Below are positions 33,300 through 62,505 of a stretch of 64,000 bases of DNA, piece by piece; within the stretch, counting starts at the first letter, position 1; every line of letters begins with the position of its first letter. Below the pieces are notes generated by a model. That model was not told the DNA's origin. It saw only the letters and a list, made by a program, of their open reading frames with translations, and ran no database searches. The position numbers were made by a program, and so were the translations under genes. Origin of the DNA: Octopus bimaculoides (lineage: Eukaryota); assembly GCF_001194135.2 (NCBI RefSeq), contig NC_068995.1, positions 2,868,477 through 2,932,476 on the forward strand, written 5' to 3'.

Positions 33300-33960
33300 T
33301 TATCCTGAAGGGGTTATCACCAATTTGTGCTCTATTGTGTCCTAAATACGGCGATATACCCCCGAAATAGCCATGTGTTCTGTGTTTGTGTTCCACCTAT
33401 ACTTGTAATCCACTGTAAATGATGTTTATGGTTTGACTTTACTGATGTTACCTGCGGAATAGGTGAAATATGGATTTTACTTTGCCACACTTTGGATGTT
33501 CTGTTGTTGGTTTGTCCCGTGCGCTTCGGTATTCCTGTTTCTGAAATTGGATTTTACCTACGAAATTTGCTGTCATGAGGCAGGTAGTTGAACTTTCGTA
33601 CTATTTATCTTGAACTTCTTTATTGGTCTCAGCGAATGAACTGTTGTGCTATGTCTCCCTATGTATTACTTTTTTCTCTATATTTTTGCTATATATATAT
33701 ATATATATTTATTCTACTGTATTTGTACCGGTCTCTAATATTTTTAATCAACTTTTAATCGCAGTTTATTTATATTCTATTGTATTTTTAATCGATTTTT
33801 TTTATTCTTATGTATAAAAATTTTGACTTCCCTTTACTAATTTGTTTTTGTGGTCTATGTTGTACTTCTTATTTGTGATCATTGGTGGGCTACGGCTTTT
33901 TGAGTCGATGACCTAACGGTTTTATTCTGCAATTAACTTTGTACCTATGTCTCAACTAGT
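33300..33960 (-). mobile_element. Possible L1/Tx1-like LINE 3' fragment nested in the DNA transposon
   Basis: Minus frame HPKCGKVKSIFHLF resembles the C-terminal CxxC...HLF knuckle; heavily decayed. Confidence 0.3.
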
Positions 33961-42502: not shown

Positions 42503-42793
42503 ATGGAAATCATAAAGAGTTCGTTGGGAGCAGATATGATCGTTTACAGAGAGTATATTTATAGAAAAGATAAAGCCAACTTGAATACCATGTACTGGCG
42601 ATGTGTTAAATCGAAATGTAAAGGGAGATTGGTGAGCATTCTGGATTATAAAGAAAAGGACGTGGAAGAAATTCAACTGAAGGTCAGGGGTCACCATTTT
42701 CATCCTCCTGATCCTTTGGATGTGAAGGCAAGGAAAGCATTAATTGAAGCGAAGTCAATTTTGAACTGCAACGAACTACCTAGAAACAAAAAG
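42503..42793 (+). CDS. FLYWCH zinc-finger coding exon A (97 codons, ATG to phase-0 donor)
   Basis: MEIIKSSLGADMIVYREYIY...YWRCVKSKCKGRL...GHHFHPP; C-x4-C and HxH intact; AAG|GTAATC after 42793; ORF tail beyond the donor is low complexity. Confidence 0.8.
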
Positions 42794-45099
42794 GTAATCA
42801 TTATTCGATTTAACCATTGTTTTAATTTTTTTTTAGCAAAAAAAACAAAACTTTCGAAATATAATTACAGCTTCAAAATGATGTTTATTTATTTTGTCTT
42901 TATTTCCAAAACATTTTTTTTTATTTATAAAGTATATATTTAATAGCTGAGTATGTATATCTGATAGACACACTCTCAACTATCTATTTCTCTCTCTCTA
43001 TTAGCCTGTCTGCCGGTCTAGTCGGGAGAAAGTTACAAAAGTGACTCTGGGGCCAACATTTTCGTCCAACCGACTTTGAATCTGAGTTTGTTTCTTTTTT
43101 ATCGATCGAATCATATATATATTCTTTTGCTGTTGGTGGACTGCAGCCTTCCTATGGAACCTAGTGACTTCTATAGTTTGAAACCAAGTATATCGATCTG
43201 TATTTGTAGAACCGTTAGTTGGACAACACCGATTTGTTTTTAAAAACCCTTGTAAACATTAACTAACCAGGTACGCGCGCGCACACATCACACATATTTT
43301 CAATACTTTTTTTTTTTACATATATGTCATCTGTTAAATTCCAGTCAACAACCTGAGGCTCATTATAGTTGAGTAGAGCCCCGTGTAAAATGTCGCGCAG
43401 TGAGATCGAACCTCAAATCTCAGTGCTGCAAAGCGAACTTTGTAACTAAACGGCCTAACGAATACGTGGAGTATATTATTTATCTTTTACTTGTTTCAGT
43501 CATTAGACTGCGGCCATGCTGGAGTACCGCCTTCAAGAATTTCTTGTCGACTCCAGTACTTATTCTATCGGTCATTTATGCCGAACAGTTAAGTTACGGG
43601 AACATTACCGGTTGTCAAGCGGCGTCGGGGGGTGGGTAGAGGACACACACAGAGCCAATCTTGCGGAGAAAGTTCATGAAAATGAAACTATTTGTTCGGT
43701 AATTTCCGACATACATGCACAAAAAAACTCCCATACTTACATACGCTAAGAATACAATAACAAGCGGTTCAAGTGAAAACAAAAGTTAAAGAAATAAAAT
43801 TTTTTACGGAAATTGCTGAACAAACACTTTCACTTTTCATGGTCTTTCTCCAAAAGAATGCCATATATATACATATAGAGAGAGAGAAGAGCGGACATAA
43901 CAAACAGAGAGAGAGATGAAATTTACTTACCATATCTATCTATCTGCTTGTCTATCTCTCCATATCTCTGTCCGTCCGTCCATCCATCTATCTATCTATC
44001 TATCTATCACACAAGTGTGCTCTCTTCCCCGATTTTGTTTCCTTACAATTTTCTGAAAAAAATGGGTATTTTTAATGAAATACCATTCTGACTGCATAAA
44101 TTATACGATTATATCGGAATTTAATGTGAAAAAAAAAATGTTGGGCGCACACACGTACATACTGTTATACTTTTCATATACATTACAAAATAAAGCTTGA
44201 TATTCTGAACACATTATGTGTGTTTTAGTATGTATGTGTGTACACCAACCTGTTTTGTTTTTTCATTATGATCGTAATCTATACACACGCACACATATGA
44301 AGTCTGTTTTTCGGCCATCGTCTCGTCACTTGTTGCGATTATTTCCTTTAGGAGGTTTCCCAATTTCTTGAAATCAGCGCTCTTCGTCCACTTTTCCCTT
44401 ATATTTTCCCATGTCTCTTCCTATTTTGCAGGTTCCTTCCATTGGAATCACTTGCCAATTCTTTTACCCAGCTTTACCCCGTTCTATACACATCACATGT
44501 CAGAACCAGTGCAGTCTTCTCTCATGCACGTTACATCTGATTCCACGAGCCAACGCGGTAGCCTGTATATTAGTCACTCGACGCGCTAGAAACAGCAGCC
44601 AAATCTCTCTCAAATTAACATCCTAAAAGATCGAACATCTTGATTATTGGAGTCTTGGGTTCCTTGCTTATAGGAAAAATACAGAATGGTCACGGTTGGA
44701 ATGTCTTTGATCAATGGTTCAATCAGGGCCTACATGAGACTATATAAACAATATCAACATTCGATTCCTCTAATATTTAGTCTTTCCCTGACCCGTTATT
44801 CACCTTCTCTGTAATGTCACCGTACAAGAAATACAGATATAATCGCATGTAACCCTTTCTCTCACAGATATCCTATCCATCAGAATAATCGAATTTGTTT
44901 CCACCTTAAATAATTCCAATCTCGTGGAAACATGCCATATGTAGTAACAATATCTTTTCTTTCTGAAACGATTTGTTTTAATTCCTTTTGTTATTCAAGG
45001 TCTGCGATATCTGCTCCTGTATCAGTTATTATTAAATCAACATCTTTATTAACAGAGTTTTAAATATCATTCAGAACAGATGGATTGACGTAGCTTCCT

Positions 45100-45290
45100 A
45101 AATGAGGAACAGCCTGATGACCCCAAGAATGTCCTTTTTACATTCATTATAAATAAGAGAACATTTACGTGGTAAATATTCTTTTAAACCCATTTTAACG
45201 TTCTCGATTATTCTGCCAGTATTTCCATTTGATTGTGGATGATATATAGAGGTGTTTTCGTAGGTCTACACCCAGTTTTAACGAAGCCAG
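45100..45290 (-). mobile_element. LTR-retrotransposon (Gypsy-like) integrase fragment
   Basis: Minus frame TSIYHPQSNGNTGRIIENVKMGLK matches the integrase YHPQSNG motif; flanked by stops. Confidence 0.6.
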
Positions 45291-45337
45291 ATGCTCGAGT
45301 TTATTATTTATGTAATTCACAGACATTGTCAAGAAGT

Positions 45338-45600
45338 CCGCCAACTTATCGCCGCCAATTCAGTGCGGAGTCAAGTTATCGGTAAACTAACTCATCGCCT
45401 CAATTAACTTACTTTAAAAATTGAAATTCATAGAAGTGAAATGGAATTGAAAAAAAAACCCTTTATTTAAAGAAATGGAATGTTAATTAAAATACCTTAT
45501 TTTACTAAAGTGTATATGTTTAAATCAGTGGTTCGCTACTAATTCATCGCCGCCAATTCATCGCGAGCCAAGTCCTCGCTCACCAACTCATCACCGAACT
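45338..45600 (+). repeat. Short direct repeats (CCAA(C/T)TCATCGC-like), Mutator-type subterminal array
   Basis: ccaacttatcgccgccaattc, ctaactcatcgcc, aattcatcgccgccaattcatcgc and ccaactcatcacc upstream of FLYWCH exon B. Confidence 0.55.
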
Positions 45601-45786
45601 ACTTCAGTATCAAACCAAATAATTACTAAGCAGACTAAATTAGCAAATTACAAGTCAGCTAATTATTAATTTAAATGTGACAGCGTTTACTTATTTACTG
45701 TTCGACGCTGGCAACTTCGGTTCATGCAATTAATTTAGAACTGTTTGAGCTACGATTGCTTAAATTTTTCAAGGAGGCCCTTCACA

Positions 45787-46095
45787 ATGGAACGTGTTTT
45801 CAGTCAGCGAGGCAAAGAGAAGTTCTCACACAATGGCTATTTGTTTATATTTGATAAATTTAGTAGGACCGACACTGACTTAATGTTTTGGCGTTGTGAA
45901 TTAATCGGCAGATGCAAAGCAAGAATTCACACAAAATTTGGCGATGTTGTGAAATTTATGAATACTCACACACATGATTGTTCACCAATAAGGGAAGTAG
46001 TAAAAATGGTCAGAAAATTGAAAAGCTGCTCTCGAAAGTCACTGGAAGGTCCAAATATAGTAATTGACGAAACATTGGGCAGTGTTTTCCGACCG
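45787..46095 (+). CDS. FLYWCH zinc-finger coding exon B (103 codons, ATG to phase-0 donor)
   Basis: MERVFSQRGKEKFSHNGYLFIFDK...FWRCELIGRCKARIH...NTHTHD; CCG|GTAAGC after 46095; possible acceptor tttttcAG-like aag| at 45773. Confidence 0.85.
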
Positions 46096-47023
46096 GTAAG
46101 CACTTCAAATAAGCATTTTTCCTTCTATATTTCTATGTATATAATAATAATTCTTTCTAATTTCGGCTCAAGGCCAGCAATTTTGAGGGAAAGAGAAAGT
46201 CAGTTATATCGATCCCAGCGTTAAGCTGGTACTTCATTTTATCGACCCGAAAGGCAAACGTTGATTTCGGCAGGATTTGAACTCAGAGCGTAGAGAGCCA
46301 GAAGAAATGCTGCTAAGTTCTTGTGTCGGATGCGCTAACAGTTCTGTCAGCTCACTGTCTTACTAATATTTTTTAATAGCAATTAAACATTTTGATGGAA
46401 TAAATTAAATGCGTGGAAATTGAACCGCTATGTTAAATTAAGGCACTGTGGCTCTCCGTTTTCATACACAAAATGCTCTAAGAATGTCCTTTCTGAATGA
46501 AATACAGTTCTTCCGTAGCTCCTTAACTCTTTCTCTTTCTTTATTCTTATTAATTCACCCACAGTATCAGTAGCGTAGCTTGGGGTAGAGCGAGCCGCCC
46601 CTGGGAAGAAACAATTTTTGGGTCTACTGTATAAACGCCTATATAGGCTCGTGAACCCGGGAGTAGGGGCTGGGTTCTTAAACTATAGGGCTTCCCCGGC
46701 GGCACATGCCACATCATTGCATAGTATACGTCAACAAATATTAACAGTACTTCTAAATTCTTGACATAAACATGATCAATGGACGCATGTATCCATTCTT
46801 CATCATCATCATCACCATCATTTAACGTCTGCTTTCCATGCTGGCATGGGTTGGACGGTTTGACAGGAGCTTGCAAGCCAGTGGATCGTGCTAGGTTTTA
46901 CTATCTGCTTTGGCATGGCTTCTATGGCTGGGCGCCTTTCCTGATGCCAATCCCTTTACAGAATGTACTGGGTGCTTTTTACGTGACACTAGAATCAGCA
47001 GTAGCAAGGTCACCAGGTAACTT

Positions 47024-47069
<46 letters not shown>

Positions 47070-47489
47070 AAAAGAAAAAACCTCAACTGAACAAGGGAGT
47101 AATATTGAGAGTACAAATGTCATGTTTTCAAAAGTTCTGAATTAAAATCTTCCACCAAACCTTAGTCTAATTGAAAGAAACACAGAGCATCTCAACAGAA
47201 ATATGGTAACAGAAGGGTTAAAGATTTTCAACAGAAATGACAACATCACACTTCTAAAACAAAATATAGACTTGTAAACCTTCAATATTCTTGGTAGTTC
47301 GTCTGTCTTTATGTTCTGAGTTCAAATTCTGCCAAAGTTGACTTTGTCTTTCATCCTTTCGGGGGGAGGGGGTCGATAAATTAAGTACCACAAAACATCA
47401 TAAAGAAGAATGAATAATTATACATCTTCAAAAGTTATTTATTACAGCATTATCCCCATTTTGAGAATAATGCTGTCAAACCCATATTG

Positions 47490-47760
47490 GTATCAAAATC
47501 TATACCAGCCCCTGTTCCAAAGGTCCCAGCTATTCCGTCTAGATTCAAGGGCCCACAACTATTTAACACCTTGCTAAAACATCTGAGGGTTCTCTATGGA
47601 CTAGGGGTAGATGTTTTCAAGAAACAACTTGAGCTCTTGCTATCCAAGCTTTGGATATTAACCTATATCAAGGCAGGAAACTCAAAAGAGGGCAGCAGTG
47701 TTGAACTCCCTCCTTCAGCAAATGCCAATCACATATAATTGACCATTGAAAGGGTGATTA
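47490..47760 (+). mobile_element. CR1/L2-like LINE 3' fragment
   Basis: FKGPQLFNTLLKHLRVLYGLGVDVFKKQLELLLS resembles the CR1-type RT C-terminus. Confidence 0.6.
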
Positions 47761-47883
47761 CACTGGCAGTGCTGCAGCATGGCCGCAACCACAGGGCTGA
47801 AATGTATAAAAGAATTCAAAGAATTTACTTCCAATCCAATACGCGTTTCTGCTGGATAAATGCCTTAATGTCTTTTGACGCAG

Positions 47884-47931
47884 TATTTAGGTGCATTTAG
47901 TTGGTTCAGCCGCAGTAAATATCCGTCCAAG
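47884..47931 (+). CDS. Candidate 48-nt phase-0/0 micro-exon (YLGAFSWFSRSKYPSK)
   Basis: ttaatgtcttttgacgcAG| acceptor, AAG|GTAAAC donor, open frame; no homology recognised. Confidence 0.2.
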
Positions 47932-48317
47932 GTAAACATTCCCATGTAGCTTTGTCCATGTTCAAAGAACATGGGTACAAACTGTTAACCTCCAATTTTA
48001 TTTCTCTTTGACTTCCAAAAAAATTCTTTTTAATATTTGATAAGATGGATGCCATCGAAACCGGTTATATTTTAAATCACTCACTCTAACAAAAATATTA
48101 AACATTCTGTAAAATATATTTTTGTGCCTTTTCAAATTTTAGTTACTTTTTTAACCATAATTTTTGATTCGTATGTACTCTTAACTCCTTTTCAACTATA
48201 TATATATATATATATAAATATATATATATTGGGGGAGAGGGATTATCACCTAGATATCCAATTAAGTTATACAAGAAGGAATCATTCCTAATAACTGACA
48301 TTGCAGTATCCTCATAA

Positions 48318-48525
48318 ACAGCTATCAGGGCAAAGGAGATGTCTTAGAGTGAAGTAGCTATTTAGGAATCAGATTATTGGATCCGATTATGAAGGTCATG
48401 GAGAAAGTTATGGCTCAATTGATTTGTGATAAGATTGACCAAGATGAGATATTGTATGGCTTCATATCCAGGAAAATACCACAGATGCAGTCTTCCTTAT
48501 GAGGAGGCAACAGGAGGTGAAATGT
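48318..48525 (+). mobile_element. RTE-type LINE reverse-transcriptase fragment
   Basis: Decayed GKGD...GIRLLDPIMKVMEKV...YGF...TTDAVFL motifs. Confidence 0.7.
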
Positions 48526-49254
48526 TTGGCTCAGAGTTGAGGGCCCGCTTTACGAGACCCTGGGTTTACGAGTTTTATTTTATTATAAATTTTTCAAACA
48601 CAAGATCCAAATTTTGAACCAAGTGCAAAAAAAGTTTCTACCACCATAACAAATGCTTCTGCATGTTACTGAGAAATTTATTGAGAGCGAATAAAAGCTT
48701 CTTCTAATCAAACAACTCTACACTTGTGTGTAAGTACAGGCAGAGGCATTTGGTTAACAAAATGGTTTCCTAACTCTAATCATGTAGTCTTGTGTGGCAC
48801 CATGTGTTTTGTATAGCCCTGGGCCAACCAAAGCCTTGCAAATGGAAACTGAAAGAAACCCATTGTGTGTGTGTGTAGTAATGTAAGTGTTAAAAAGTAT
48901 ATTATTAAACTATGCTTTACATAGTGAAAACATTCTGATACGGAACTCAATGCAGTGATAGTTGTGTGCGGCCCAACCTGGAGCAAAACTCAGAGTAGAT
49001 TATCAAATTCTGATATAATAAATACAGAGACACACACACACAACATTTGTGTATAATTATGGGTATGTGCGAGTATGTGCATATATGAGTGCAGTGGTGG
49101 GACCCTGCGCCATTAGAACTTGCAGGTGGGACCCTTTAGTCTCCTGGCAACCAATATTTTTAGACCCAGTCCGCCACTGTATGAGTGTATGTATATGTCT
49201 CTTCCTCTCTCTCTGTATATATATATATATATATATACCGGAGTAAGCACATGA

Positions 49255-49375
49255 AATGTGCAACAAGGTGGAAAAAAGAGTACTCAAATATCTTGTTCCA
49301 GGATAAGAAGGCGCTTAACCAAAGACGCGAACTTTTAAACACATGTAGGCATGCGTCCAAATTTAAAATGTCTAC
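49255..49375 (+). mobile_element. Penelope-like GIY-YIG C-terminal remnant
   Basis: LNQRRELLNTCRHASKF resembles the PLE LNKRSELVSKCRH motif. Confidence 0.5.
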
Positions 49376-49936
49376 ATGTAATATTCCATATGGGTAAAAT
49401 TTTGGACTATGATCGACTCCTTATAACCATTGTGCAATCTGACTATATATANNNNNNNNNNNNNNNNNNNNNNNNNNNNNNNNNNNNNNNNNNNNNNNNN
49501 NNNNNNNNNNNNNNNNNNNNNNNNNNNNNNNNNNNNNNNNNNNNNNNNNNNNNNNNNNNNNNNNNNNNNNNNNNNNNNNNNNNNNNNNNNNNNNNNTATA
49601 TATAGGTTACTTGGAAAAGGACGCGTGGCGTTCGGAGTACATAAAACAGGGGACAACTGATGAAGGGAATGTTCTTTATGCTGCATGTCTGTTTCTCTGT
49701 TTGTTTGTTGTTTTTGTTGTTTGAAAAAAAGTTCGTTTTCTATGCTTTTGTTTTTTATGTTCTCGTTTCTCATTCTGTCCACGTTTTTTTGATGTCCTGT
49801 ACCCATATATGCATGTATGTATACATATATATGTAGGTATGTACATATATGTATGTATATATTTATATATTATTTATATTATTATTATTATAATATACAG
49901 ACGATACAAAGAAAACAAGGATGTATCATGTGAATA

Positions 49937-49991
<55 letters not shown>

Positions 49992-50029
49992 TACTTGAAG
50001 ATCATGGTGGTGGTGTCACTGATTTTTCC

Positions 50030-50115
50030 CAGTCGCATTTTCCCAGCCAACATTTCCTAGTCACATTTTCGTAGCCGACATTTCTCGATAGCAGTTTTCT
50101 CCCAGCAAGACTACT
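50030..50115 (+). repeat. Short direct repeats (CATTTTCCCAG-like), Mutator-type subterminal array
   Basis: tttttcccagtcgcattttcccagccaacatttcctagtcacattttcgtagccgacatttctcg upstream of FLYWCH exon C. Confidence 0.55.
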
Positions 50116-50443
50116 TTAGACAATATTTTCCGTTTTTATTTGCAATAATTCTATGAAAATTATAATTAACACAAGTAATCAGTAAGGAAGAAGATTACAT
50201 GACGGAAAATGTTTTTATTTTGTTATGTTTAATTAAGGCTGTAAATAAATTATTTTAACTGTAAAAAGGTTATCAAACAGTTAACATTACAATTTCTCTT
50301 TATAAATACGTCATAAGATTTAAGATTAATAGCGATAAAAATTATCAAGTTATAAAGTTTGATTCATTTAGTATTTGCTTCCAGGAATATTCGAGAAATA
50401 TTCGTTTGCTATAATTGAGTATTAACAAATTTTATGCTGGAAT

Positions 50444-50803
50444 ATGGATAACAACGTTTCATACATCGCAAGTATCAGAGGCAAGGAAAAAGCTTGCAAC
50501 AATGGCTATGTTTATGGGTTTGACAAGAAAAGCAAGAAAGACGACCAGCTCTTCTTTTACCTCTGCGAGAGACAAAGATACGAGCAATGTCCATCGAGAA
50601 TCCATGTAAAACATGACACGGTGGTGAAACGCATGCATCAACATAACCATGCTCCAAATCGATCAAGGAAAAAAACCTTGAAAATAGCTTCTGAGATCAA
50701 AGATCATGCGGCCACTTCCGCGGAACCGTTCATAAATACCATCATAGCAGACAGGACAACTCATATACCAGCCTCTGTTGCAGCAGCAGTAATTATACCA
50801 AAT
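50444..50803 (+). CDS. FLYWCH zinc-finger coding exon C (120 codons, ATG to phase-0 donor)
   Basis: MDNNVSYIASIRGKEKACNNGYVYGFDK...FYLCERQRYEQCPSRIH...HQHNHAP; AAT|GTAGGT after 50803 (alternative phase-1 donor 4 nt later); acceptor tttgcttccAG| at 50384 with an in-frame stop (50423-25) before the ATG. Confidence 0.85.
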
Positions 50804-50866
50804 GTAGGTACTCTGTTTACTTTGCCTGTTCATTCACACAGATACAAAATACTATATATATGTAAA

Positions 50867-50901
<35 letters not shown>

Positions 50902-51035
50902 ATGTAATGTCTTTTTGTTGATATAGACACACGTACGCAGATGTGTTTATATACATACATGTACCTGTGCGGCTGTAATGGTCTGTCTTGGCTGGGATAT
51001 CGATCGCTGGGAAAAGCGGCTGGGAAATGCGTTAC

Positions 51036-51069
<34 letters not shown>

Positions 51070-51512
51070 CATTTTATATTGTCGAGAGATATTCTTGCTT
51101 TTGGCACAACCGGTCTATTTTTCTTTTAGAGTGTATCCTTGTTTTTCCTGACTTATAGACTAACTGATCACACACACACACAAAGATGTGTGTAATTTCA
51201 TTTATGTACCTGGAAATTCTACGAACAAATTCTGCTCATCGTATCAATGTTAATATGTATGTATGTATGTATGTATGTATGCGTGCGTGCGAGTGTGCAT
51301 GTCTATACGAGTTCCTGTTTATGTGTTCTTGTCTGTGAGTGCTTGTATCGATGTTACTGTGTATATATATTTAAGCGTCCAACCCATGCTAGCATGGAAA
51401 ATGAACGTTAAACGATGAGGATGATAAATGATTATATATATATATATATATATATAGACCTTTTGCGATGAAATCTCTTGCTATATTGGTAACGATTACA
51501 TGTTTTTCTATG

Positions 51513-51555
<43 letters not shown>

Positions 51556-51580
51556 TTATTAATATTTCTANNNNNNNNNN

Positions 51581-51620
<40 letters not shown>

Positions 51621-52203
51621 TTATTAATATTTCTAAGTCTCTCTAAAGGGGATATTTAATAACTTTATTAATAGTGACTTCGAATGCCACATACAAGTGT
51701 GTGTATGTTTTTATATGACTAACATTTTGAGGTTACTTACAATACCAAAAAGCTTCCACAACCATGGTTCCAGGTTCATTTCTACTGCATGGCACCTTCA
51801 TCAAGTGCCTTCCACTATGATCCGAGGCAAACTAAATATTTGTGATTAGATTCGTGTGGGTCAGTCACAATTTGATGGGGCAGATTTTTTTTATGGCCAG
51901 ATGCTCTTCCTTCTATCACTTCTCATCTGATTCAAAGCAGGTAATATTTCTTTTCTAGTTCAGACATGGTTGTAAATGGAAAATTGCAAACAAATGATAC
52001 TGTTTGTATAATGGGATTGAACCTGCAATCACTCGGTTGTGAAATGAAACACTTAACCATACAGCCATGACAGCACCTCTCTGTCTGTCTGTCTCTCTCT
52101 CTTACATACATACACACACGTTCTTTCTCTTTTCCTCCCTCATCTCTGTGTGTGTGTGTATGTTTCTGGAATCTGAGGAAATATTTCTTTCATATTTTTG
52201 CAG

Positions 52204-52302
52204 AATGCTAGCTACAGTACCAGAAAGAAATTGAGCAAATCTCCAAGAGAAGAACCCATTTCTGATATGGATCCTTTCAGTTCTGAAGTTAGTAAAGTAA
52301 AG
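52204..52302 (+). CDS. Phase-0/0 mini-exon 1 (NASYSTRKKLSKSPREEPISDMDPFSSEVSKVK)
   Basis: tttcatatttttgcAG| acceptor, AAG|GTAAGC donor, 99 nt, open frame. Confidence 0.7.
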
Positions 52303-52429
52303 GTAAGCAGTGTGTGTGTGTGTGTAGGGGTGCAATCGGTTGTTGTTGTGATACAGTGAGTTAAGAGAAATTTGGCTGCTCTTTTTAGCATACTGAATAA
52401 CTATGTAGGGGTCTCCCTATTGTCTTGTG

Positions 52430-52830
52430 TTATGACTGGTTGATAACAAGTTGGGGTAGTTGACAGAAGATTGAGAAAGATGATTGAAGACTGAGGTAGG
52501 TGACATTGTAGTAGATGACATATTGTGGTTGATGATTATATTGTGTTAGATGCCTGGAGATTGAGGCTGGTGACAGAAGATTGAAGTAGATGATAGAGAA
52601 TTGGGATAAATAACTGAAGATTGAGGTAGATGACTGAAGATTGACTTAGTTGACAAAAGATTAAAGTAGAAGACTGAAGAATGAGATAGTTAACAGAAGA
52701 TTGAGCTAGATGACAGAAGATTGAGGTAGATGACTGAAGATTGTGGTAGATAGCAGAAAATTGTGGTAGATGACAGAAAATCGAGGTAGGTGACTGACAA
52801 TTGTTGTAGATGACTGAAGATTGAGATTGA
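52430..52830. repeat. Minisatellite of ~20-nt unit (TGACTGAAGATTGAGGTAGA)
   Basis: Many degenerate tandem copies between the two mini-exons. Confidence 0.9.
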
Positions 52831-52876
52831 TAAAAAAAAATGTGAGGAAACTGAAAATATTTCCGATATATTTCAG

Positions 52877-52993
52877 CAATATAGTCGTTTCAACAGAAGA
52901 AAGAAAGTGAACAAATGTCCAAGAGTGGAAAATATCAAAATGTTGTCCAGCCCTGTCACGGCTCCCTTCATTCATGAAGTCACTGAATTCAAG
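52877..52993 (+). CDS. Phase-0/0 mini-exon 2 (QYSRFNRRKKVNKCPRVENIKMLSSPVTAPFIHEVTEFK)
   Basis: gatatatttcAG| acceptor, AAG|GTAAGC donor, 117 nt, open frame, similar to mini-exon 1. Confidence 0.7.
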
Positions 52994-54674
52994 GTAAGCA
53001 AACAAATGTATAAGGTTAGGTTTTGTAGCTGTTTTTCTTTTTCACTCAGTTTACTTAGTAACCACCAGGCAGTAGGGCACCATCTCCTTGTCTTCACTTG
53101 TCATAATGTATGTATGTATGTATGGTACACTGTGTGTATGTATGGTATAGTATGTGTGTGTGTATATATGGTATAGTATGTATGTGTGTGCGTGCACACA
53201 TGTATATATGTAAAATATAACTGGTGTGTATATAATGAAGACACTAATTTACAACTATCACTCAATGTCAGGACATTCACACTGCATGGTACATTGGACA
53301 AATGACTTCTGTATCCATATGAACTAATGGTTCTTAACCTGGATTGTAGTGTCCAGTTGTGGGCATTGTGGGATCACAAGATGGTGGCAAATGCCTAATG
53401 GGAACTGGATGTTTAGACAAATTGTGAATGTTCTCAGAAACAAAATATTTAAACTCAGTGGAATCCTTTTATTTTAAATATATTAAAAAAATAAAACAAA
53501 AGTCTGTCAGGATTAGAATGTAAGTTGGACATTGTGTTATCAGTGAGTAGATACTTGACTGATGATGTGGCAAGGTGTGTAATATCACTGCCATTAGTCC
53601 TCACTTCAGTAATTTCTATAAATAAATTCAACATGGTGCCACTTGTCCTTGCAAATATCGAAAAAGAGGCTCCTGTTTGATGGTTTAATGAAACCTCTAA
53701 GTGCAAAATTAGCTACTGTTAGGTTAAAAAAAAAGAATTCACAAAATATGGCGAGGGTGATATTCATGAAAATGCCATTTGTTGAAAGGAGGTGATGAGG
53801 TACAGGAAAGAACGACTGGGAAAAGTATGATAGGCTTAAAATGATATCGAATATCCTTTTAGAAATGATTATTTTCTGAAAAACTGGTGGAAGTCTGTAG
53901 AGTGACTGAACAATTGTGTCCACTGATTAAATAAAACAATGGAGAGGTGGCAGTGCCGTTTTCAGGCATGGGAACATGGAACAGTTGCTTGGAGGCCACA
54001 CCACTATAGGCACCCAGTTCTGATCTGTGTACGACAGTGGTTCTCAGCCATTTTTTGCCCATAGATCTCTTTGATTCCAATTTTACTCTACAAGATCCAA
54101 ATAAACATTTGTTGTTTAAAACAGTCCCATTATATTTTCATAATTAAATATCATTTGGAATTGTATGCAAAAAATTAAAATATTTTGTATATTGTAGAAG
54201 TAAAACCAGTTTATTGCACATGAATTTTAACAGCAAAATCTTATGTACACCCCCAAAAAGGGCCATGTGGACAGCGTATATTGTATGCTGTCAATAAGTA
54301 AATAGTATGGGGCCTATAATCCTAGTAAGACTGCTCTGGGTGGTGTTGAAATATAAACGATTATTTCCACCTTCCGGCTGAATGTGTCTCTCCGTAGTTA
54401 TGTCCCTTTATTTTCTTGCCAACTTCGATATTCGCAGTAAAAAAAAATCAATAATACGAGATACCACCGAGGATATTATTTATTGTCTATAGCTTTTAGC
54501 ACTAGGATAGCTTCAATTTACAGTAATGAGTAATGTTATAAATGGAATCACACATAATTTGATCGACGACTAATTATAGCAATTCTTGCATATATGCAAA
54601 TGTCGTTCGGTGAGGATGCAGTTTTCAGTTTTAGAAACCAATTTATCACCGATCTTTCACTTTGGGGCTCATAA

Positions 54675-54945
54675 GGGCTGGTTTCCTGGTGTCATTGGTG
54701 TATAGGTTCCCCATCTGAACAGGACGCTGCTCTGTTGCAGGTGAGCTGCTAAATGCTGGAGGAAAGAGTGAGAGAAAGTTGTGGCAAAAGAGTCAGCAGA
54801 GGTTCACCATTACCTTCTGTCAGAGCCACATGGAACTTAAGGTGTTTTGCTCATAAACATACACATCGCCCGGTCTGAGATTTGAACCCATGATCCCTTG
54901 ACTGCGAGTCCGCTTCTCTAACCACTAGGCCATGTGCCTCCACTA
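54675..54945 (-). mobile_element. tRNA-derived SINE, near full length
   Basis: Ends in gagatttgaacccatgatccc...ctctaaccactaggccatgtgcctccac, the reverse complement of a tRNA-like head. Confidence 0.75.
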
Positions 54946-55589
54946 GTTATATATGTAATGACTTCAAATTTTGGCACAAAGCCAGCAAGTTTGGAGAGGG
55001 GATAAGTCGATTACATCGACCTCAGTATGCAACTGGTACTTATTTTATCAAACCTCAAAAGAATTAAAGGCAAAGTCAACCTCGGCAGAATTAGAACTCA
55101 AAATGTGAAGACGGACAAAATGCTACCAAGCATTTTACTTGGCATTCTAATGATTCTTTTCTACTCTAGGCACAAGGCCCGAAATTTTCGAGGGAGCCCT
55201 AAACACTTAAAAGGGTGGCCTCATGTATATGAAATTCAAACTATAAAAACCATAAGATAAATTATTAAACACATTGATTAAATTTATTAGGCGAATATTA
55301 ACAATATTCAGTCGCATTAAGTATGGTTACTCACATACATTATAAAGTACACGTAATTACATAACAGCACTGACGTACGAACACGCACGCACGCTTAATG
55401 CACGTTGTTTTTCAACTTCATTCATCTTTTAAATGATTAATATTGAAATTAAAACAAAGATATTTTAATCCGAAGAAACTTCGTTGGGTTCTGTGAATGA
55501 ATATCTCTGCTGAAATATCGAACACATTGGGACAAGAAACAACTTCACGAAATATATAAACATTTGAAAGTTTATAATAACTTCGACAT

Positions 55590-55945
55590 ACCCTCGTAAA
55601 AGAGTTTGATTTCCCCATAGCTTCCAGAAAAATGGATATTTGTAATGAAATTTTCTACAAATTCCTTCTAGATAATGTGGATTAAGATTATGTCGGAATT
55701 TAACGCAAAAAACAATTGAGGGCGCGCACACATCAGTACTGACAAACACCACCTACCTTAAAATGAAACTTGAAATTTTGAAAAAAATTATGTGATTTGT
55801 TTCTGTGTAATGTGTGCGCGCTCAGTATTATATTTTTTTTTACATTAAATTCCAATATAATCGTAATCTATACGACCAGAAAGTTACTTGTACAAAATTT
55901 CATTAAAAAATATGAAATTTTCTGAAAGTTATGAGGCAAAAAAGC
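55590..55945. repeat. Palindromic arrangement of a dispersed MITE-like family
   Basis: aatgaaattttctacaaa...ggaatttaa...gcgcgcacacat is mirrored by atgtgtgcgcgc...ttaaattcc...aaaatttcatt; related pieces near 35240, 37050, 44030 and 58990. Confidence 0.55.
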
Positions 55946-56640
55946 CAGGGCGGCACAGTTGTGTTGGTATGCTGTAAATCGTTCGGTCAGCTACGTTTGT
56001 GAAAGTCCTTCTGTCGTCGTTCGCGATCCCTTCATTGACATGCTCGCTTTACTCCAAGTCGGTCTCCTAGTTTATAAGTTCTGTATTTAAATTTATATGG
56101 ACGTGATTGAGAAATCCTCCTGAGATACAACAAAATGTATTTCAACGCACGGATCTTGCAAAACCAAATACAAAAACCTAAATATTTGAAAAATAAGGAA
56201 AAATAAAATAAAAATATGACCTGATGGTTACGTGTGAAAATCTGGTAGGAATCGAAACCTTTACGTCGAGTACTTGCTTTTTTGGTATGTATTGTATTTT
56301 ATAAGCTTACTACACTCACAATAGAATATCGTCTTGGATAGAGAGACAAATGCAGAGATACGAGAGGAGGTATGTTGGTTCTTAAAACGATCGTTTGACA
56401 GTGACTTTACAATGACAGAGTGTAGCTGTCATTTTTACTGACTGATCGATTTGCCTTGTCACACAGCAGCCAGTCACAAATACACGTAATTAAGTTCACA
56501 GCCTTCCTCGTTTACAGCTACAATATGTCATGACGATTTGCTGTCATCTCATTCGTTCATTGATTAAATTTTTAATAATAAACAACCTTTGTTTTCCCTT
56601 CTTTTGCCAACCAATTTACTTTGTAATCATTTGACACATG

Positions 56641-56690
56641 TGCGTCATTACGCGAGCTGTTACTCACGTGATTCGGCTCCTCCAATCAGA
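56641..56690 (+). promoter_or_regulatory. Candidate proximal promoter of the DUF3504 exon
   Basis: TGCGTCA (56641-47), E-box TCACGTGA (56664-71) and CCAAT (56682-86) clustered 50-95 nt upstream of the ATG at 56736. Confidence 0.45.
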
Positions 56691-56735
56691 TGCAGGAGTT
56701 TGATATACGACAGTTTCTCGGAAATTTTGGTGATC

Positions 56736-57950
56736 ATGTCGGATGTAGCTGACTCAAAGCCATTATCGTCTTCACTCACGCAATCCTTTATGAATGACTT
56801 CAACGCTGATATTGTTAGCGGAACCAAAAGCGATAAAAATGTTCTGTTAGTTGCAGATGACCCTCCTCCTGCAATGAATTCTATAAACTTCATAAACCTA
56901 GACGAATGTAGCCAGCTGGCAGGTTCGAGGAACACTAAACGGGTCACCGCCAGTTCTGTTAAATTGTTTCGAGCCTTTTTAAAGGAGACCAATAATGGAA
57001 GGACTGATTTTGAAAATTTTGATGAAGAACTCCTTATCAGTCATTTGATAACTTTTTTTAAGCGGGTAAGAAAGCCAGATGGTGATCTGTATACGAAGAA
57101 TGGTTTGCTGTCGATTCGTTTCGGACTAAGAAGGCGCTTGTTAGACTTACGTAAAGTCGATATTACTAAGCACCCTCGCCTTAATTCAGTTTTTACTGCT
57201 CAGATCAATAAATTGAAACGAGAAGGAAAAGGAGATATAAACCATTATCCTCCCATTAGTCAGGATGACATGTTCAAAATTTATAGTTCAGGGATTTTGT
57301 CACCCGACACGCCAAAAGGGTTGTTAAGGAAGATTTTCTTTGAGACTGAAATGTTTTTTTGTCGACGAAGTAGAGAAAACCTAAGGGATTTGAAAGGAAG
57401 TCACTTTAAAATTGAAACCGACGATCAGGGCAAAATATATTTGACCACAGATTTTGATCCATCGTTTGGTGGTGGACCAATCAAACGGATTTATGAAACT
57501 GGCACAGACATATGTCCAGTGAAAGCCTTTCGGAAGTTTTTGCTGAAACGTCATTCTGGCTGTGAGGCGTTATTTCAACGTCCCGTGGATATAATTCCGT
57601 TTTCTGAACAGGATCCTTGGTTTTATTGTTCAGCTCTCGGCCTCAATAAACTCGCCAACATGATGAGAGAAATTTCTTCAGAAGCGTGCCTATCCAAGAT
57701 ATATACAAATCATTCCATAAGAGCTACCTCAAAATCGGTCTTTGATCTCGTCTGGAACGGACTCTTCTCGCAGAACTCACCGAATACAATAGCACCTGCC
57801 TCTAGTGATGTCAGCAATATTAGTGACATAACTTCTGTTTCAATGGAGAAGCCAAAGCAACGATCATCATCATCTCAAGGAAATGAAACTGATATCGATT
57901 TGAAATCGAACTTAGACATACAAGAAATTGAAAGGAAACACGTCCCTGTG
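56736..57950 (+). CDS. Crypton-derived tyrosine-recombinase-like (DUF3504, ZMYM/QRICH1/KCTD1-like) coding exon, 405 codons to phase-0 donor
   Basis: NTKRVT.SSVKLF..FL, FFKRVRKPDGDLY, LLRKIFF....FCRRSRENLRDL, CPVKAF..FL, WF....LGLNKL..MM, YTNHSIRATS; then a Ser-rich linker and GTG|GTGAGT after 57950; no stops. Confidence 0.85.
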
Positions 57951-59233: not shown

Positions 59234-59876
59234 NNNNNNNNNNNNNNNNNNNNNNNNNNNNNNNNNNNNNNNNNNNNNNNNNNNNNNNNNNNNNNNNNNN
59301 NNNNNNNNNNNNNNNNNNNNNNNNNNNNNNNNNNNNNNNNNNNNNNNNNNNNNNNNNNNNNNNNNNNNNNNNNNNNNNNNNNNNNNNNNNNNNNNNNNNN
59401 NNNNNNNNNNNNNNNNNNNNNNNNNNNNNNNNNNNNNNNNNNNNNNNNNNNNNNNNNNNNNNNNNNNNNNNNNNNNNNNNNNNNNNNNNNNNNNNNNNNN
59501 NNNNNNNNNNNNNNNNNNNNNNNNNNNNNNNNNNNNNNNNNNNNNNNNNNNNNNNNNNNNNNNNNNNNNNNNNNNNNNNNNNNNNNNNNNNNNNNNNNNN
59601 NNNNNNNNNNNNNNNNNNNNNNNNNNNNNNNNNNNNNNNNNNNNNNNNNNNNNNNNNNNNNNNNNNNNNNNNNNNNNNNNNNNNNNNNNNNNNNNNNNNN
59701 NNNNNNNNNNNNNNNNNNNNNNNNNNNNNNNNNNNNNNNNNNNNNNNNNNNNNNNNNNNNNNNNNNNNNNNNNNNNNNNNNNNNNNNNNNNNNNNNNNNN
59801 NNNNNNNNNNNNNNNNNNNNNNNNNNNNNNNNNNNNNNNNNNNNNNNNNNNNNNNNNNNNNNNNNNNNNNNNNNNN
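59234..59876. other. Assembly gap (largest; others at 17577-17659, 33111-33236, 49452-49596, 51571-51580)
   Basis: Runs of N. Confidence 1.
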
Positions 59877-61074: not shown

Positions 61075-61410
61075 GAGCTGGCAGAAACGTTAGCAGGCCG
61101 GGTGAAATGCTTAGCGGTATGCCATCTGTCTTTGCCTTCTGAGTTCAAATTCTGCCGAGGTTGACTTTTCCTTTCATCCTTTCTGGGTTGATAAATTAAG
61201 TACCAGTTGCGTACTGGGTCGATCTAATTTGTTACCCACAAACACACATATACACAGCAAGCTTCTTTCAGTTTCTGTCTACCAGATCCACTCACAAGGC
61301 TTTGGTCAGCCCTGGGGCTGTAGTAGAAGTCATTTGCCCAAGGTGCTGTGCAGTGGGACTGAACCCAAGACCACATGTTTGGGAAGCAAGCTTCTTCACC
61401 ACACAGCAAT
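61075..61410. mobile_element. Two adjacent SINEs of different families
   Basis: ctggcagaaacgttagca...tctgagttcaaattc (+) followed by ggcttctttcagtttc...cttcaccacacagc (-). Confidence 0.8.
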
Positions 61411-62505
61411 ACCTGTGCCTGAACTAACTGATCAACTGCATGAGAGATGACTGTGTCCAACTTTGCAGAATGGTAGTTCAAATATGCCAGTGGCGTATTT
61501 GGAAAACAAGCCATTTACTGTGTTTTGTCATGGAGAAAATTTCTCGCTGCTTAGCGCTTCCACCCCACAATATTAGGTTCTGTTACAAGGGCCTGGACGT
61601 CCACAGTCTTTATGCTCCCCAAACGACGGAACTTCTATTGGTTGCTCGACATGCTAGAAATAACAGCCACTACTCCCTCATCATGCCCCGTCATCTTAAA
61701 AATATAATGTAGTCCTAGATACACTACGCCTGCCAGAAAGAAAATGAAAAGGAAAAAGCGAGAGAGTCGTGACTAGAACGCCTTTGGTCATTGATCTGTT
61801 CGATCAGAACTGACCAGGAGCCAAACGGCAGCATGGCCCTCGTTTTGGCTTCAGTAGTCTCATTGTGTTGGTCATTTCGTTGGAGAAAACGGGAGAAAAG
61901 ATAACGTTCTTGACCGTCTGCGCGGCTGTCCCCGCCATTCCTGGTGTGAACCTAAAGCTTTTCATGACTTATCTCAGAGATTCCTTTAGGAAAGGCACCA
62001 ACACCTATAACTCCTACTAAAAACATCGCCTTAGAAGATGACAGTAATAATAATCCTTTCTACTGTAGGCACAAGGCCTGAAATTTTAAGGGCGAGGGGC
62101 TAGTCGATTATATCGATCCTAGTACTTAACTGGTACCTGTTTTATCGACCGTGAAAGAATAAAAGGCAAAGTCGACCTCAGTGGAGATTGAACTCAGAAT
62201 GTAAAGCATTTCGCCCAGCGTGTTAACGATTCCACCAGATCGCCGCCTTAGAAGATGACATCAATTATGATCACAGCAGTAATATGTAAATGAAAGTCTA
62301 ACCTCTGTTCCGAGTTCAAATCCTGCTGAAGTCGACTCTTATCCTTCCGGGACAGGTGGTGGTTTAGCAGAAACATTGTTTCGACTCCTTGCGTTCTGAG
62401 TTCAAATCCCACCCTCATACTATTTGGGTGGTCACCTTAACCTGTTACCTCGTTTAATAGCAGAGCCTACTTTTCATACCAAGCATTCGAGTCAGGCTTC
62501 GGCGT

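What the first reader, a model, noticed from the sequence alone, without database searches (positions are those of the whole stretch)
42503..57950. Candidate switchable DNA-binding-domain gene: array of transposon-derived first coding exons, all ending in phase-0 donors
Seen: four plus-strand units (FLYWCH 42503-42793, 45787-46095, 50444-50803; DUF3504 56736-57950), each with its own ATG, an unbroken DNA-binding domain and a GT donor exactly at a codon boundary (AAG|GTAATC, CCG|GTAAGC, AAT|GTAGGT, GTG|GTGAGT). Beyond each donor the frame decays into low-complexity or unrelated sequence. Other transposon sequences in the window are mostly full of stops. Two phase-0/0 exons (52204, 52877) are frame-compatible acceptors for the FLYWCH exons. 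Known: FLYWCH comes from Mutator-like transposases and DUF3504 from Cryptons; Drosophila mod(mdg4) swaps variable 3' FLYWCH exons onto a constant N-terminus; clustered protocadherins use variable first exons. Inference: a mirror-image mod(mdg4)-like locus where captured transposase DNA-binding domains from different superfamilies act as alternative N-termini on a shared C-terminus. I do not recall such a locus in cephalopods, and the constant 3' exons were not found in this window.
Basis: partly seen in the sequence, partly recalled or inferred. Interest (0 to 1): 0.9.

Follow-up and report, generated by a model that had tools for sequence, protein, structure and literature searches.

The report
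Octopus BTB gene with swappable transposon-derived heads
This is one Octopus bimaculoides gene (LOC106879774) in which alternative first exons, most of them domains taken from three kinds of transposon, are each spliced onto the same BTB-domain tail; public gene models already show it, but no searched paper describes it.

Summary

- **Units in the window.** There are three intact FLYWCH first coding exons (42503-42793, 45787-46095, 50444-50803) and one Crypton-type DUF3504 exon (56736-57950). Each runs from an ATG to a phase-0 GT donor.
- **Match to RefSeq.** Joining these exons at exactly those donors to exons 52204-52302 and 52877-52993, and then to three constant exons 11.6-24.5 kb beyond the window, reproduces RefSeq proteins of O. 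bimaculoides LOC106879774 residue for residue (isoforms X1, X3-X7). The DUF3504 exon joins the constant exons directly.
- **Constant part.** It carries a coiled-coil-like repeat and a BTB/POZ domain.
- **More first exons.** A second DUF3504 first exon (isoform X2) lies about 1 kb past the window end. Two first exons without a DNA-binding domain lie at 33575-33583 and 51875-51940.
- **Conservation.** O. sinensis has the same exon order. It also has an extra CENP-B-type first exon carried by a 699-bp pogo-like insertion with inverted repeats and a TA duplication. O. bimaculoides has the empty site.
- **Selection.** It is strong on the DUF3504 and constant exons, clear on the FLYWCH-2 and FLYWCH-3 domains, and undetectable on FLYWCH-1.

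It is a new variant of known kinds (KCTD1b-type transposase capture; mod(mdg4)/lola-type BTB loci). Transcript evidence was not checked directly.

The parts
33575..33583 (+). Most distal first coding exon, ATGAGGCAG|GTAGTT ('MRQ'), phase-0 donor. It gives isoform X7, which has no DNA-binding domain.
   Evidence: Sequence read. Spliced to exon A, exon B and the constant exons it reproduces XP_014784962.1 exactly. The recorded gene range starts here.
42503..42793 (+). FLYWCH-1 first coding exon (97 codons), donor AAG|GTAATC. Isoform X5.
   Evidence: Pfam FLYWCH E 2.8e-9. The splice product equals XP_052829115.1. The O. sinensis orthologue is 84.5% identical with ATG and donor kept. omega 0.7, not distinguishable from neutral.
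45787..46095 (+). FLYWCH-2 first coding exon (103 codons), donor CCG|GTAAGC. Isoform X4.
   Evidence: Pfam FLYWCH E 8.5e-13. The splice product equals XP_014784960.1. Syntenic orthologues exist in O. sinensis and in a third species (L001). omega is 0.18 overall and 0.04 in the domain.
50444..50803 (+). FLYWCH-3 first coding exon (120 codons), donor AAT|GTAGGT. Isoform X3.
   Evidence: Pfam FLYWCH E 1.7e-11. There is no AG between the upstream in-frame stop (50423-50425) and the ATG, so it cannot be entered in frame from upstream. The splice product equals XP_014784959.1. Domain omega is 0.08-0.33 and tail omega about 0.4-1.1 across three species, with the donor conserved.
51875..51940 (+). Short first coding exon without a DNA-binding domain (ATG at 51875 in the old model, 51893 in the current one), donor CAG|GTAATA. 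Isoform X6.
   Evidence: The splice products equal XP_014784961.2 and XP_014784961.1.
52204..52302 (+). Exon A (33 codons, phase 0/0, basic RKK..K.PR motif). Used by every isoform that starts upstream of it.
   Evidence: AG/GT sites are identical in O. sinensis.
52430..52880 (.). 20-bp minisatellite that fills the intron between exons A and B.
   Evidence: families D1 and D4.
52877..52993 (+). Exon B (39 codons, phase 0/0), a tandem paralogue of exon A. Both are included together in the models.
   Evidence: (72-76% nucleotide identity to A, including the splice sites).
56628..56715 (+). Conserved promoter-like block upstream of the DUF3504-1 ATG: TTGACACATGTGCGTCATT, TCACGTGA (E-box), CCAAT, CTATACGACA.
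   Evidence: Invariant blocks in a three-way alignment with loci L005 and L006, whose coding synonymous sites are saturated. The 19-mer occurs once in the window.
56736..57950 (+). DUF3504-1 first coding exon (405 codons): a Crypton-type tyrosine-recombinase fold without the catalytic His/Tyr end. Donor GTG|GTGAGT. Spliced directly to the constant exons. Isoform X1.
   Evidence: A phase-0 donor sits at the same place in L005 (GAG|GTAAGT) and L006 (GAG|GTAAGT). The constructed 910-aa product exists exactly as XP_014784956.1. omega is 0.19 against O. sinensis.
51672..51673 (.). Empty TA target site. In O. sinensis a 699-bp pogo-like element inserted here supplies a CENP-B_N first exon.
49452..49596 (.). 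Assembly gap within (TA)n, intronic.
   Evidence: The exon order matches the O. sinensis locus, which has no N run in the fetched stretch.
51571..51580 (.). Assembly gap flanked by identical 53-mers, intronic.

Best explanation
The window covers the 5' two-thirds of one gene, Octopus bimaculoides LOC106879774. The gene spans about 55 kb, from window position 33575 to window-equivalent position 88471.

**Structure**
- It has a string of alternative first coding exons on the + strand. Each has its own ATG and a phase-0 donor.
- In gene order these are a 3-codon leader, FLYWCH-1, FLYWCH-2, FLYWCH-3 and a short exon with no DNA-binding domain.
- Next come the shared exons A and B.
- Then come DUF3504-1 and, about 1 kb beyond the window, DUF3504-2.
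- All converge on three constant exons. These encode a QQAEFMEAQK repeat (probably a coiled coil), a classical dimer-type BTB/POZ domain and a long disordered tail.

**Origin**
- The FLYWCH exons are the first ~100 residues of Mutator-like (MULE) transposases.
- The DUF3504 exons are Crypton-type tyrosine-recombinase folds that have lost the catalytic end.
- O. sinensis has gained a further first exon from a pogo-like element.

**Shown and inferred**
- Shown here: the exons, their phases, their exact agreement with gene models in two species, their transposon origin, their synteny and the pattern of selection.
- Inferred: choice of first exon, most likely by separate promoters, gives one BTB scaffold several different DNA-recognition heads, plus headless forms. 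BTB-mediated pairing would then let isoforms act as homo- or heterodimers at different genomic targets, probably as transcriptional or chromatin regulators.
- Inferred: new heads are added when a transposon lands in sense orientation in the 5' region and a donor inside its transposase ORF splices to the next host exon.
For: **Gene structure**
- Exact reproduction of eight isoform proteins by GT-AG splicing of the genomic sequence (sources).
- BTB domain PF00651, E 3.5e-11, 43.7 bits against a cut-off of 20.5. The nearest solved structures are gigaxonin, KLHL and BACH1 BTB domains.
- The constant exons are absent from the window. They lie at window-equivalent 75649-75950, 78063-78204 and 87398-88471.

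**Conservation**
- Same exon order, ATG contexts and donors in O. sinensis.
- DUF3504-1 and DUF3504-2 lie in the same order, with phase-0 GTAAGT/GTAGGT donors, in a far more diverged species (L005).

**Selection (omega)**
- Constant exons 0.05-0.11, DUF3504-2 0.06, DUF3504-1 0.19.
- FLYWCH-2 0.18, with 0.04 in the domain.
- FLYWCH-3 domain 0.08-0.33.

**Transposon origin**
- 8 of 10 close single-FLYWCH relatives carry a MULE domain.
- L007 is 80% identical in nucleotides to FLYWCH-2. It runs on without an intron, across one in-frame stop, into further sequence that I judged transposase-like by eye but that gave no Pfam hit.
- No transposase catalytic domain is left in window 36-64 kb.
- The O. 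sinensis CENP-B_N exon sits in a 699-bp element with 14-nt inverted repeats and a TA duplication. O. bimaculoides has the empty site.

**Own promoter**
- A conserved promoter-like block lies upstream of DUF3504-1.
Against: - No transcript data were examined here. All XP_ proteins are Gnomon predictions, and the O. sinensis models may have been helped by O. bimaculoides proteins.
- No spliced product turned up among proteins called on Logan assemblies. Those hits were genomic read-throughs.
- FLYWCH-1 shows no measurable constraint between the two Octopus species: omega 0.7, p = 0.34. The FLYWCH-3 tail evolves at about the neutral rate.
- Separate promoters are supported only for DUF3504-1.
- DNA binding is untested for every head, and for DUF3504 it has no experimental precedent (Kojima and Jurka 2011, PMC3212892).
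- The DUF3504 Pfam match is below threshold.
Confidence: 0.82

Rival explanations
1. One distal promoter, near 33.5 kb, drives all upstream isoforms. The FLYWCH exons are then chosen by alternative splicing as mutually exclusive 5' exons behind a non-coding leader, rather than by separate promoters.
For: - A distal exon at 33575-33583 splices over all three FLYWCH units to exon A in isoform X7.
- No promoter evidence was obtained for the FLYWCH units. Identity upstream of them between the two Octopus species is about the same as the intron background.
Against: - FLYWCH-3 has an in-frame stop 18 nt before its ATG, and no AG lies between them.
- Against a third species, the 100 bp upstream of FLYWCH-2 are 93% identical, compared with 87% over the whole upstream flank.
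- The pogo-derived exon in O. sinensis starts 188 bp inside its element, where that element's own promoter would be.
- DUF3504-1 has a deeply conserved upstream block.
Confidence: 0.2
2. The FLYWCH units are transposon relics that the gene predictor stitched onto a real BTB gene. Only the DUF3504 and headless isoforms are biologically meaningful.
For: - FLYWCH-1 omega is 0.7, and the FLYWCH-3 tail about 1.
- FLYWCH exon identity between the two Octopus species is close to the intron background.
- No spliced FLYWCH product was found outside the RefSeq models.
Against: - The FLYWCH-2 and FLYWCH-3 domains are under purifying selection against a more distant species.
- All three ORFs, ATGs and donors are intact in two or three species, with only one 3-nt indel, while neighbouring introns are full of indels.
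- All are in sense orientation and phase 0.
- No close copies were found elsewhere among 5.8 billion protein clusters.
Confidence: 0.1
3. The units are parts of active or recently active transposons (MULE, Crypton) that happen to lie inside a large intron.
For: - Domain homology to transposases.
- L007 shows that a related MULE family exists.
Against: - No transposase catalytic domain is present.
- The DUF3504 units lack the catalytic His and Tyr.
- They are single-copy and syntenic across species.
- omega is well below 1 for most.
Confidence: 0.02

Closest known systems
Vertebrate KCTD1 isoform b (Kojima and Jurka 2011, PMC3212892)
   Same: A Crypton-derived DUF3504 domain, confined to one exon upstream of a pre-existing BTB gene, forms an alternative N-terminus on a BTB protein. 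A shorter BTB-only isoform coexists. The catalytic residues are lost and the sequence is conserved.
   Different: KCTD1 has one captured domain and a T1/KCTD-type BTB. The octopus gene has five captured heads in O. bimaculoides, a sixth in O. sinensis, from three transposon superfamilies. Its BTB is the classical PF00651 type, nearest to KLHL and BACH1.
Drosophila mod(mdg4) and lola
   Same: One BTB module is combined with many alternative DNA-binding exons. In mod(mdg4) these are FLYWCH domains of the same transposase ancestry.
   Different: In flies the BTB is N-terminal and constant, and the variable exons are at the 3' end, joined partly by trans-splicing. The fly BTB is the arthropod-specific TTK type (PMC11426971). 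Here the variable exons are at the 5' end with their own ATGs, the BTB is C-terminal, and the heads come from unrelated transposon families.
Host-transposase fusion genes formed by transposase capture (Cosby et al., bioRxiv 10.1101/2020.05.07.082677)
   Same: A transposase DNA-binding domain is joined to host domains by splicing after a DNA transposon inserts in or near a host gene. The O. sinensis pogo insertion with inverted repeats, a TA duplication and an empty orthologous site is a textbook early stage.
   Different: The described cases are single captures, mostly in tetrapods and mostly onto KRAB or SCAN domains. Here repeated captures accumulate at one locus.
Clustered protocadherin and UGT1A variable-first-exon loci
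   Same: Tandem variable first exons are each spliced to shared constant exons.
   Different: Those variable exons are paralogues made by duplication, each with a defined promoter. Here the units are of independent origin (the three FLYWCH units are only 26-28% identical), and promoters are not demonstrated.
Octopus BTB-linked CENPB and THAP factors (Mukherjee and Moroz 2023, PMC10027918)
   Same: That paper reports that most Octopus CENPB and THAP transposon-derived factors carry BTB/POZ, the same pairing of a transposon head with BTB.
   Different: It treats them as separate proteins. It does not use the words 'isoform' or 'alternative', and does not cover this locus's FLYWCH/DUF3504 array.

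Membership tests
Host-transposase fusion gene (transposase capture) | The domain is homologous to a transposase domain. | tested here: met
   FLYWCH relatives carry MULE. DUF3504 homologues carry Phage_integrase/DUF3504. The O. sinensis CENP-B_N exon lies inside an element with inverted repeats and a target-site duplication.
Host-transposase fusion gene (transposase capture) | It is joined by splicing to host-derived domains in one mRNA. | tested here: inconclusive
   Met at the level of gene models: exact identity to eight predicted isoforms in two species. Transcripts themselves were not examined.
Host-transposase fusion gene (transposase capture) | Loss of transposition machinery, single-copy, syntenic. 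| tested here: met
   No catalytic domain. Syntenic in O. sinensis and L005. No close copies found.
Host-transposase fusion gene (transposase capture) | Purifying selection on the captured domain. | tested here: met
   DUF3504-1 0.19, DUF3504-2 0.06, FLYWCH-2 domain 0.04, FLYWCH-3 domain 0.08-0.33. FLYWCH-1 alone is inconclusive (0.7).
mod(mdg4)/lola-type BTB locus | A constant BTB module shared by many isoforms with different DNA-binding exons. | tested here: met
mod(mdg4)/lola-type BTB locus | N-terminal BTB with variable 3' exons. | tested here: not met
   The variable exons are 5' with their own ATGs, and the BTB is encoded by the last two constant exons.
mod(mdg4)/lola-type BTB locus | TTK-type BTB. 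| not tested
   The best solved matches are gigaxonin, KLHL and BACH1. PMC11426971 reports no TTK motif outside arthropods. No TTK profile was run here.
mod(mdg4)/lola-type BTB locus | Trans-splicing of variable exons. | not testable with these tools
   All units are on the same strand and colinear, so cis-splicing suffices.
Variable-first-exon cluster (protocadherin/UGT1A type) | Each variable exon has its own promoter. | tested here: inconclusive
   A conserved upstream block was found only for DUF3504-1. There are no start-site data.
Variable-first-exon cluster (protocadherin/UGT1A type) | The variable exons are tandem paralogues. | tested here: not met
   FLYWCH units are 26-28% identical to each other. 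The two DUF3504 units are about 28-30% identical. The heads come from different superfamilies.
Active MULE or Crypton transposon | Intact transposase or recombinase with catalytic residues, and terminal repeats. | tested here: not met

The most novel reading that the evidence does not exclude
The locus may be a standing 'transposon trap'. Its 5' region repeatedly captures the DNA-binding heads of invading DNA transposons (MULE, Crypton, pogo) and couples them to a BTB module. Each isoform would then recognise the ends or relics of its source family and silence or organise chromatin there. That would be a heritable, modular defence or regulatory system against DNA transposons, analogous in logic to KRAB zinc-finger arrays but built by capture instead of duplication. 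The recent pogo capture in O. sinensis, the different extra head in the L005 species, and the fast evolution of FLYWCH-1 and the FLYWCH-3 tail are all compatible with ongoing turnover.
Probability: 0.15. Interest if true: 0.85.

Novelty: new variant of a known kind. Interest (0 to 1): 0.6.

Why it matters
- **Modular factor evolution.** It shows, outside vertebrates and insects, how a single host gene can collect DNA-binding domains from several unrelated transposon families and deploy them as interchangeable N-termini on one oligomerising scaffold.
- **Convergence with flies.** The order of parts is the reverse of fly mod(mdg4)/lola, so multi-headed BTB regulators were reached independently.
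- **A capture caught in progress.** The species-specific pogo-derived exon, with intact inverted repeats and an empty orthologous site, shows the capture step at an early stage. That makes the process directly testable.
- **Wider question in cephalopods.** Most Octopus CENPB and THAP factors are reported to carry BTB (PMC10027918). This raises the question of whether such arrays are a general route of regulatory innovation in cephalopods.

Tried and rejected
- **Word-indexed protein searches** with FLYWCH-2, and with a chimera of FLYWCH-1, FLYWCH-3, exon A and exon B, found no annotated protein. That wrongly suggested an unannotated locus. The exhaustive HMM search then found the RefSeq isoform.
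- **Transposase remnants next to the units.** A Pfam scan of all stop-to-stop frames of at least 60 aa in 36-64 kb, and tblastn with the L007 tail, found none.
- **Missing recombinase end.** I looked for it in a downstream exon of the DUF3504 unit and found none.
- **Conserved constant exons** were sought by tblastx between the window and L005/L006. Only the DUF3504 exon matched. The constant exons are outside both.
- **CENP-B_N exon in the 51571-51580 gap.** I tested whether the O. sinensis exon is hidden there. Rejected: the empty insertion site is in assembled sequence about 90 bp downstream of the gap.
- **L005's CENP-B/Tc5 unit** is absent from both Octopus loci.
- **Species behind the SRR/ERZ samples.** The attempt to identify them through the paper library failed.
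- **The bacterial promoter scan** is irrelevant to an animal genome and was ignored.
- **The distal leader exon** was not found within 10 kb upstream of FLYWCH-1 in O. sinensis.

Full report
**1. The observation**

- Three + strand ORFs at 42503, 45787 and 50444 start with ATG. They match Pfam FLYWCH above threshold (E 2.8e-9, 8.5e-13, 1.7e-11).
- Each meets a GT exactly at a codon boundary after 97, 103 and 120 codons.
- The fourth unit is a 491-codon frame from the ATG at 56736. Its DUF3504 match is below Pfam's cut-off: 24 bits against 29.7. Its homologues carry DUF3504, QRICH1 and Phage_integrase domains.
- Its frame runs 87 codons past the proposed donor at 57950, so that donor needed independent support.
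- Exons 52204-52302 and 52877-52993 have clean AG and GTAAGC boundaries and are 33 and 39 codons long. They are paralogues of each other, separated by a 20-bp minisatellite.

**2. The assembly gaps**

- The gap at 49452-49596 lies inside a (TA)n run.
- The gap at 51571-51580 is flanked by identical 53-mers.
- Both are intronic.
- The O. sinensis locus has no N run in the fetched 92 kb, and it shows the same exon order and similar spacing.
- No reading frame depends on either gap.

**3. First comparative evidence**

- FLYWCH-2 has a syntenic orthologue on Logan contigs of another species (L001-L004). The exon is 92.9% identical against 86.9% for the upstream flank, and the domain part is 95-98% identical with no indels. 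omega is 0.18 overall and 0.04 in the domain.
- The DUF3504 unit has relatives at 66-69% identity on L005 (a 237-kb contig) and L006.
- Homology among these three ends after the motif YTNHSIRATS. The His and Tyr that the wider family keeps are missing.
- About 70 codons further on, all three carry a consensus donor in phase 0: GTG|GTGAGT, GAG|GTAAGT and GAG|GTAAGT. After it they share nothing.
- L005 also carries, on the same strand, a CENP-B_N/HTH_Tnp_Tc5 ORF and a second DUF3504 ORF. Each runs from an ATG to a phase-0 GTAAGT or GTAGGT donor.
- Upstream of the DUF3504 ATG, four blocks are invariant among the three loci, although synonymous sites in the coding part are saturated. The blocks are TTGACACATGTGCGTCATT, TCACGTGA, CCAAT and CTATACGACA.

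**4. Identification of the gene**

- Word-indexed searches found no annotated protein.
- The exhaustive profile search with the FLYWCH alignment did. P0014 is 680 aa and consists of FLYWCH-2, exon A, exon B and 505 further residues.
- P0014 is XP_014784960.1, 'uncharacterized protein LOC106879774 isoform X4' of Octopus bimaculoides.
- Its cluster contains isoforms built on FLYWCH-1 (X5), FLYWCH-3 (X3), a short exon at 51875-51940 (X6) and a three-codon exon at 33575-33583 (X7). It also contains the O. sinensis orthologues from LOC115220336.
- I built the product expected if the DUF3504 exon is spliced at 57950 directly to the constant part. That 910-aa sequence exists exactly as isoform X1, XP_014784956.1.
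- The genomic locus (L008, CM046615.1) shows that window position = L008 position + 23574.
- The constant exons lie at window-equivalent 75649-75950, 78063-78204 and 87398-88471.
- A second DUF3504 first exon lies at window-equivalent 65016-66182, with donor CAG|GTAAGT. Its predicted product is isoform X2, XP_014784958.1.
- All eight conceptual GT-AG splice products equal the database proteins residue for residue.
- The constant part has a BTB/POZ domain (PF00651, E 3.5e-11). It is closest to the gigaxonin, KLHL and BACH1 BTB domains among solved structures.

**5. Origin of the heads**

- Of ten close relatives with a single N-terminal FLYWCH, eight carry a MULE transposase domain. They match the query profile through the ~35-residue tail after the zinc finger.
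- So each FLYWCH exon is the first ~100 residues of a Mutator-like transposase.
- L007, from a metagenome scaffold, is 80% identical in nucleotides to FLYWCH-2. It continues without an intron, across one in-frame stop. The sequence that follows looked transposase-like to me by eye but gave no Pfam hit.
- No catalytic transposase domain remains in 36-64 kb of the window.

**6. A capture caught early**

- The O. sinensis locus (L009) has the order FLYWCH-1, -2, -3, a CENP-B_N exon (isoform X5), A, B, DUF3504-1, DUF3504-2, C1-C3.
- The CENP-B_N exon lies in a 699-bp element at L009 19965-20663. The element has terminal inverted repeats (CAGTCAACTCTCGC) and a TA duplication.
- O. bimaculoides has the uninterrupted target, with the TA at window 51672-51673.
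- The element's ATG is 188 bp inside it, and a donor CCG|GTCAGT within the transposase frame joins exon A in phase 0.
- This isoform cannot have been modelled from O. bimaculoides proteins. I take that as indirect evidence for transcript support (inference).
- L005's species has a different extra head, CENP-B_N plus Tc5 HTH, between the two DUF3504 exons. Both Octopus species lack it.
- The set of heads therefore turns over between lineages, while the two DUF3504 heads are old.

**7. Selection, O. bimaculoides against O. sinensis**

| Exon | omega |
|---|---|
| C1 | 0.05 |
| C2 | 0.05 |
| C3 | 0.11 |
| DUF3504-2 | 0.06 |
| DUF3504-1 | 0.19 |
| Exon A | 0.21 |
| Exon B | 0.48 |
| FLYWCH-3 | 0.37 |
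| FLYWCH-2 | 0.54 |
| FLYWCH-1 | 0.71 |

- The two species are close: intron identity is 91-95%. Power is therefore low for the short exons.
- Against the third species, the FLYWCH-2 domain gives 0.04 and the FLYWCH-3 domain 0.08-0.33. The FLYWCH-3 tail gives about 0.4-1.1.
- FLYWCH-1 cannot be told from neutral (p = 0.34). Its ATG, frame, zinc ligands and donor are intact in both species.
- ATG contexts and donors of all units are conserved.

**8. How it most likely works**

- Shown: one gene, many first exons, all phase 0, one BTB tail.
- Inferred: promoter choice, or less likely splice choice from the distal promoter, sets which head is made. The heads give different DNA specificities. The BTB domain and the coiled-coil-like repeat let isoforms pair. 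The headless isoforms could modulate the others.
- Exons A and B carry basic RKK..K.PR motifs that look like nuclear localisation signals (inference from sequence). They are present only in isoforms that start upstream of them.

**9. Comparison with known systems and novelty**

- The closest single precedent is vertebrate KCTD1 isoform b. There a Crypton inserted upstream of a BTB gene gave a DUF3504 first exon (PMC3212892).
- The general mechanism is transposase capture by splicing (bioRxiv 10.1101/2020.05.07.082677).
- The closest system-level analogue is mod(mdg4)/lola, with the order of the parts reversed and a different BTB subtype (PMC11426971).
- Mukherjee and Moroz noted that Octopus CENPB and THAP factors usually carry BTB. 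They did not describe isoform arrays (PMC10027918).
- No paper in the searched library names this gene or this architecture.
- The gene models are public, so the locus itself is not a discovery.
- The new element is the reading of it as a multi-family, still-growing array of captured heads. I rate it a new variant of known kinds.

**10. Limits**

- I did not see any RNA data.
- The statement that Gnomon isoforms need transcript support is general knowledge about that pipeline, not something checked here.
- The species behind L001, L005, L006, L007 and L010 are unknown.

Noticed in passing
L009 19965-20663 (O. sinensis); empty site at window 51672-51673: A 699-bp pogo/Tc1-like non-autonomous element with 14-nt inverted repeats, an internal copy of the repeat and a TA duplication. 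It supplies the CENP-B_N first exon of O. sinensis isoform X5 and is absent from O. bimaculoides.
   Followed up: yes
L008 41442-42608 (window-equivalent 65016-66182, just past the window end): A second DUF3504 first exon (389 codons, donor CAG|GTAAGT), equal to isoform X2. It is 77% identical to the second DUF3504 unit of L005, which makes L005 the orthologous locus of a distant species.
   Followed up: yes
window 27875-28426 (-): A 183-codon ORF with Cys-rich motifs. It coincides with the 5' end of the upstream, divergently oriented gene recorded as a 651-aa PHD-finger protein (L008 1-4852, - strand). About 5 kb separates it from the first coding exon of LOC106879774.
   Followed up: partly
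window 52430-52880: A 20-bp minisatellite (consensus about TGAAGATTGAGGTAGATGAC, some 22 copies) fills the intron between the paralogous exons A and B. It is also present, with length differences, in O. sinensis.
   Followed up: partly
window 40728-40799, 47293-47364, 61116-61187, 55005-55110, 62102-62206 and others: Short dispersed repeats of about 70-110 bp occur in both orientations through the introns. They are likely SINE-type elements.
   Followed up: no
window 62964-63059 (-): A weak exon-A-like translated match on the opposite strand (E 0.005). It may be chance.
   Followed up: no
window 59234-59876: A third assembly gap (643 N) lies in the intron between the two DUF3504 first exons. 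In L005 a CENP-B/Tc5 head lies at the comparable place, but O. sinensis, which has no N run in the fetched stretch, has none there.
   Followed up: partly
Constant exon C1 (window-equivalent 75649-75950): The number of QQAEF(M/I)EAQK repeats differs by one between the 2015 isoform X2 model (900 aa) and X1 (910 aa). This may be a repeat-length variant or an in-exon splice variant.
   Followed up: no
L007 (metagenome scaffold ZHAN22-2_SAMN18200489): A FLYWCH sequence 80% identical in nucleotides to FLYWCH-2 runs on past an in-frame stop into further open frame. It sits in a sample labelled as a metagenome, so cephalopod or other mollusc DNA is probably present in that sample.
   Followed up: partly
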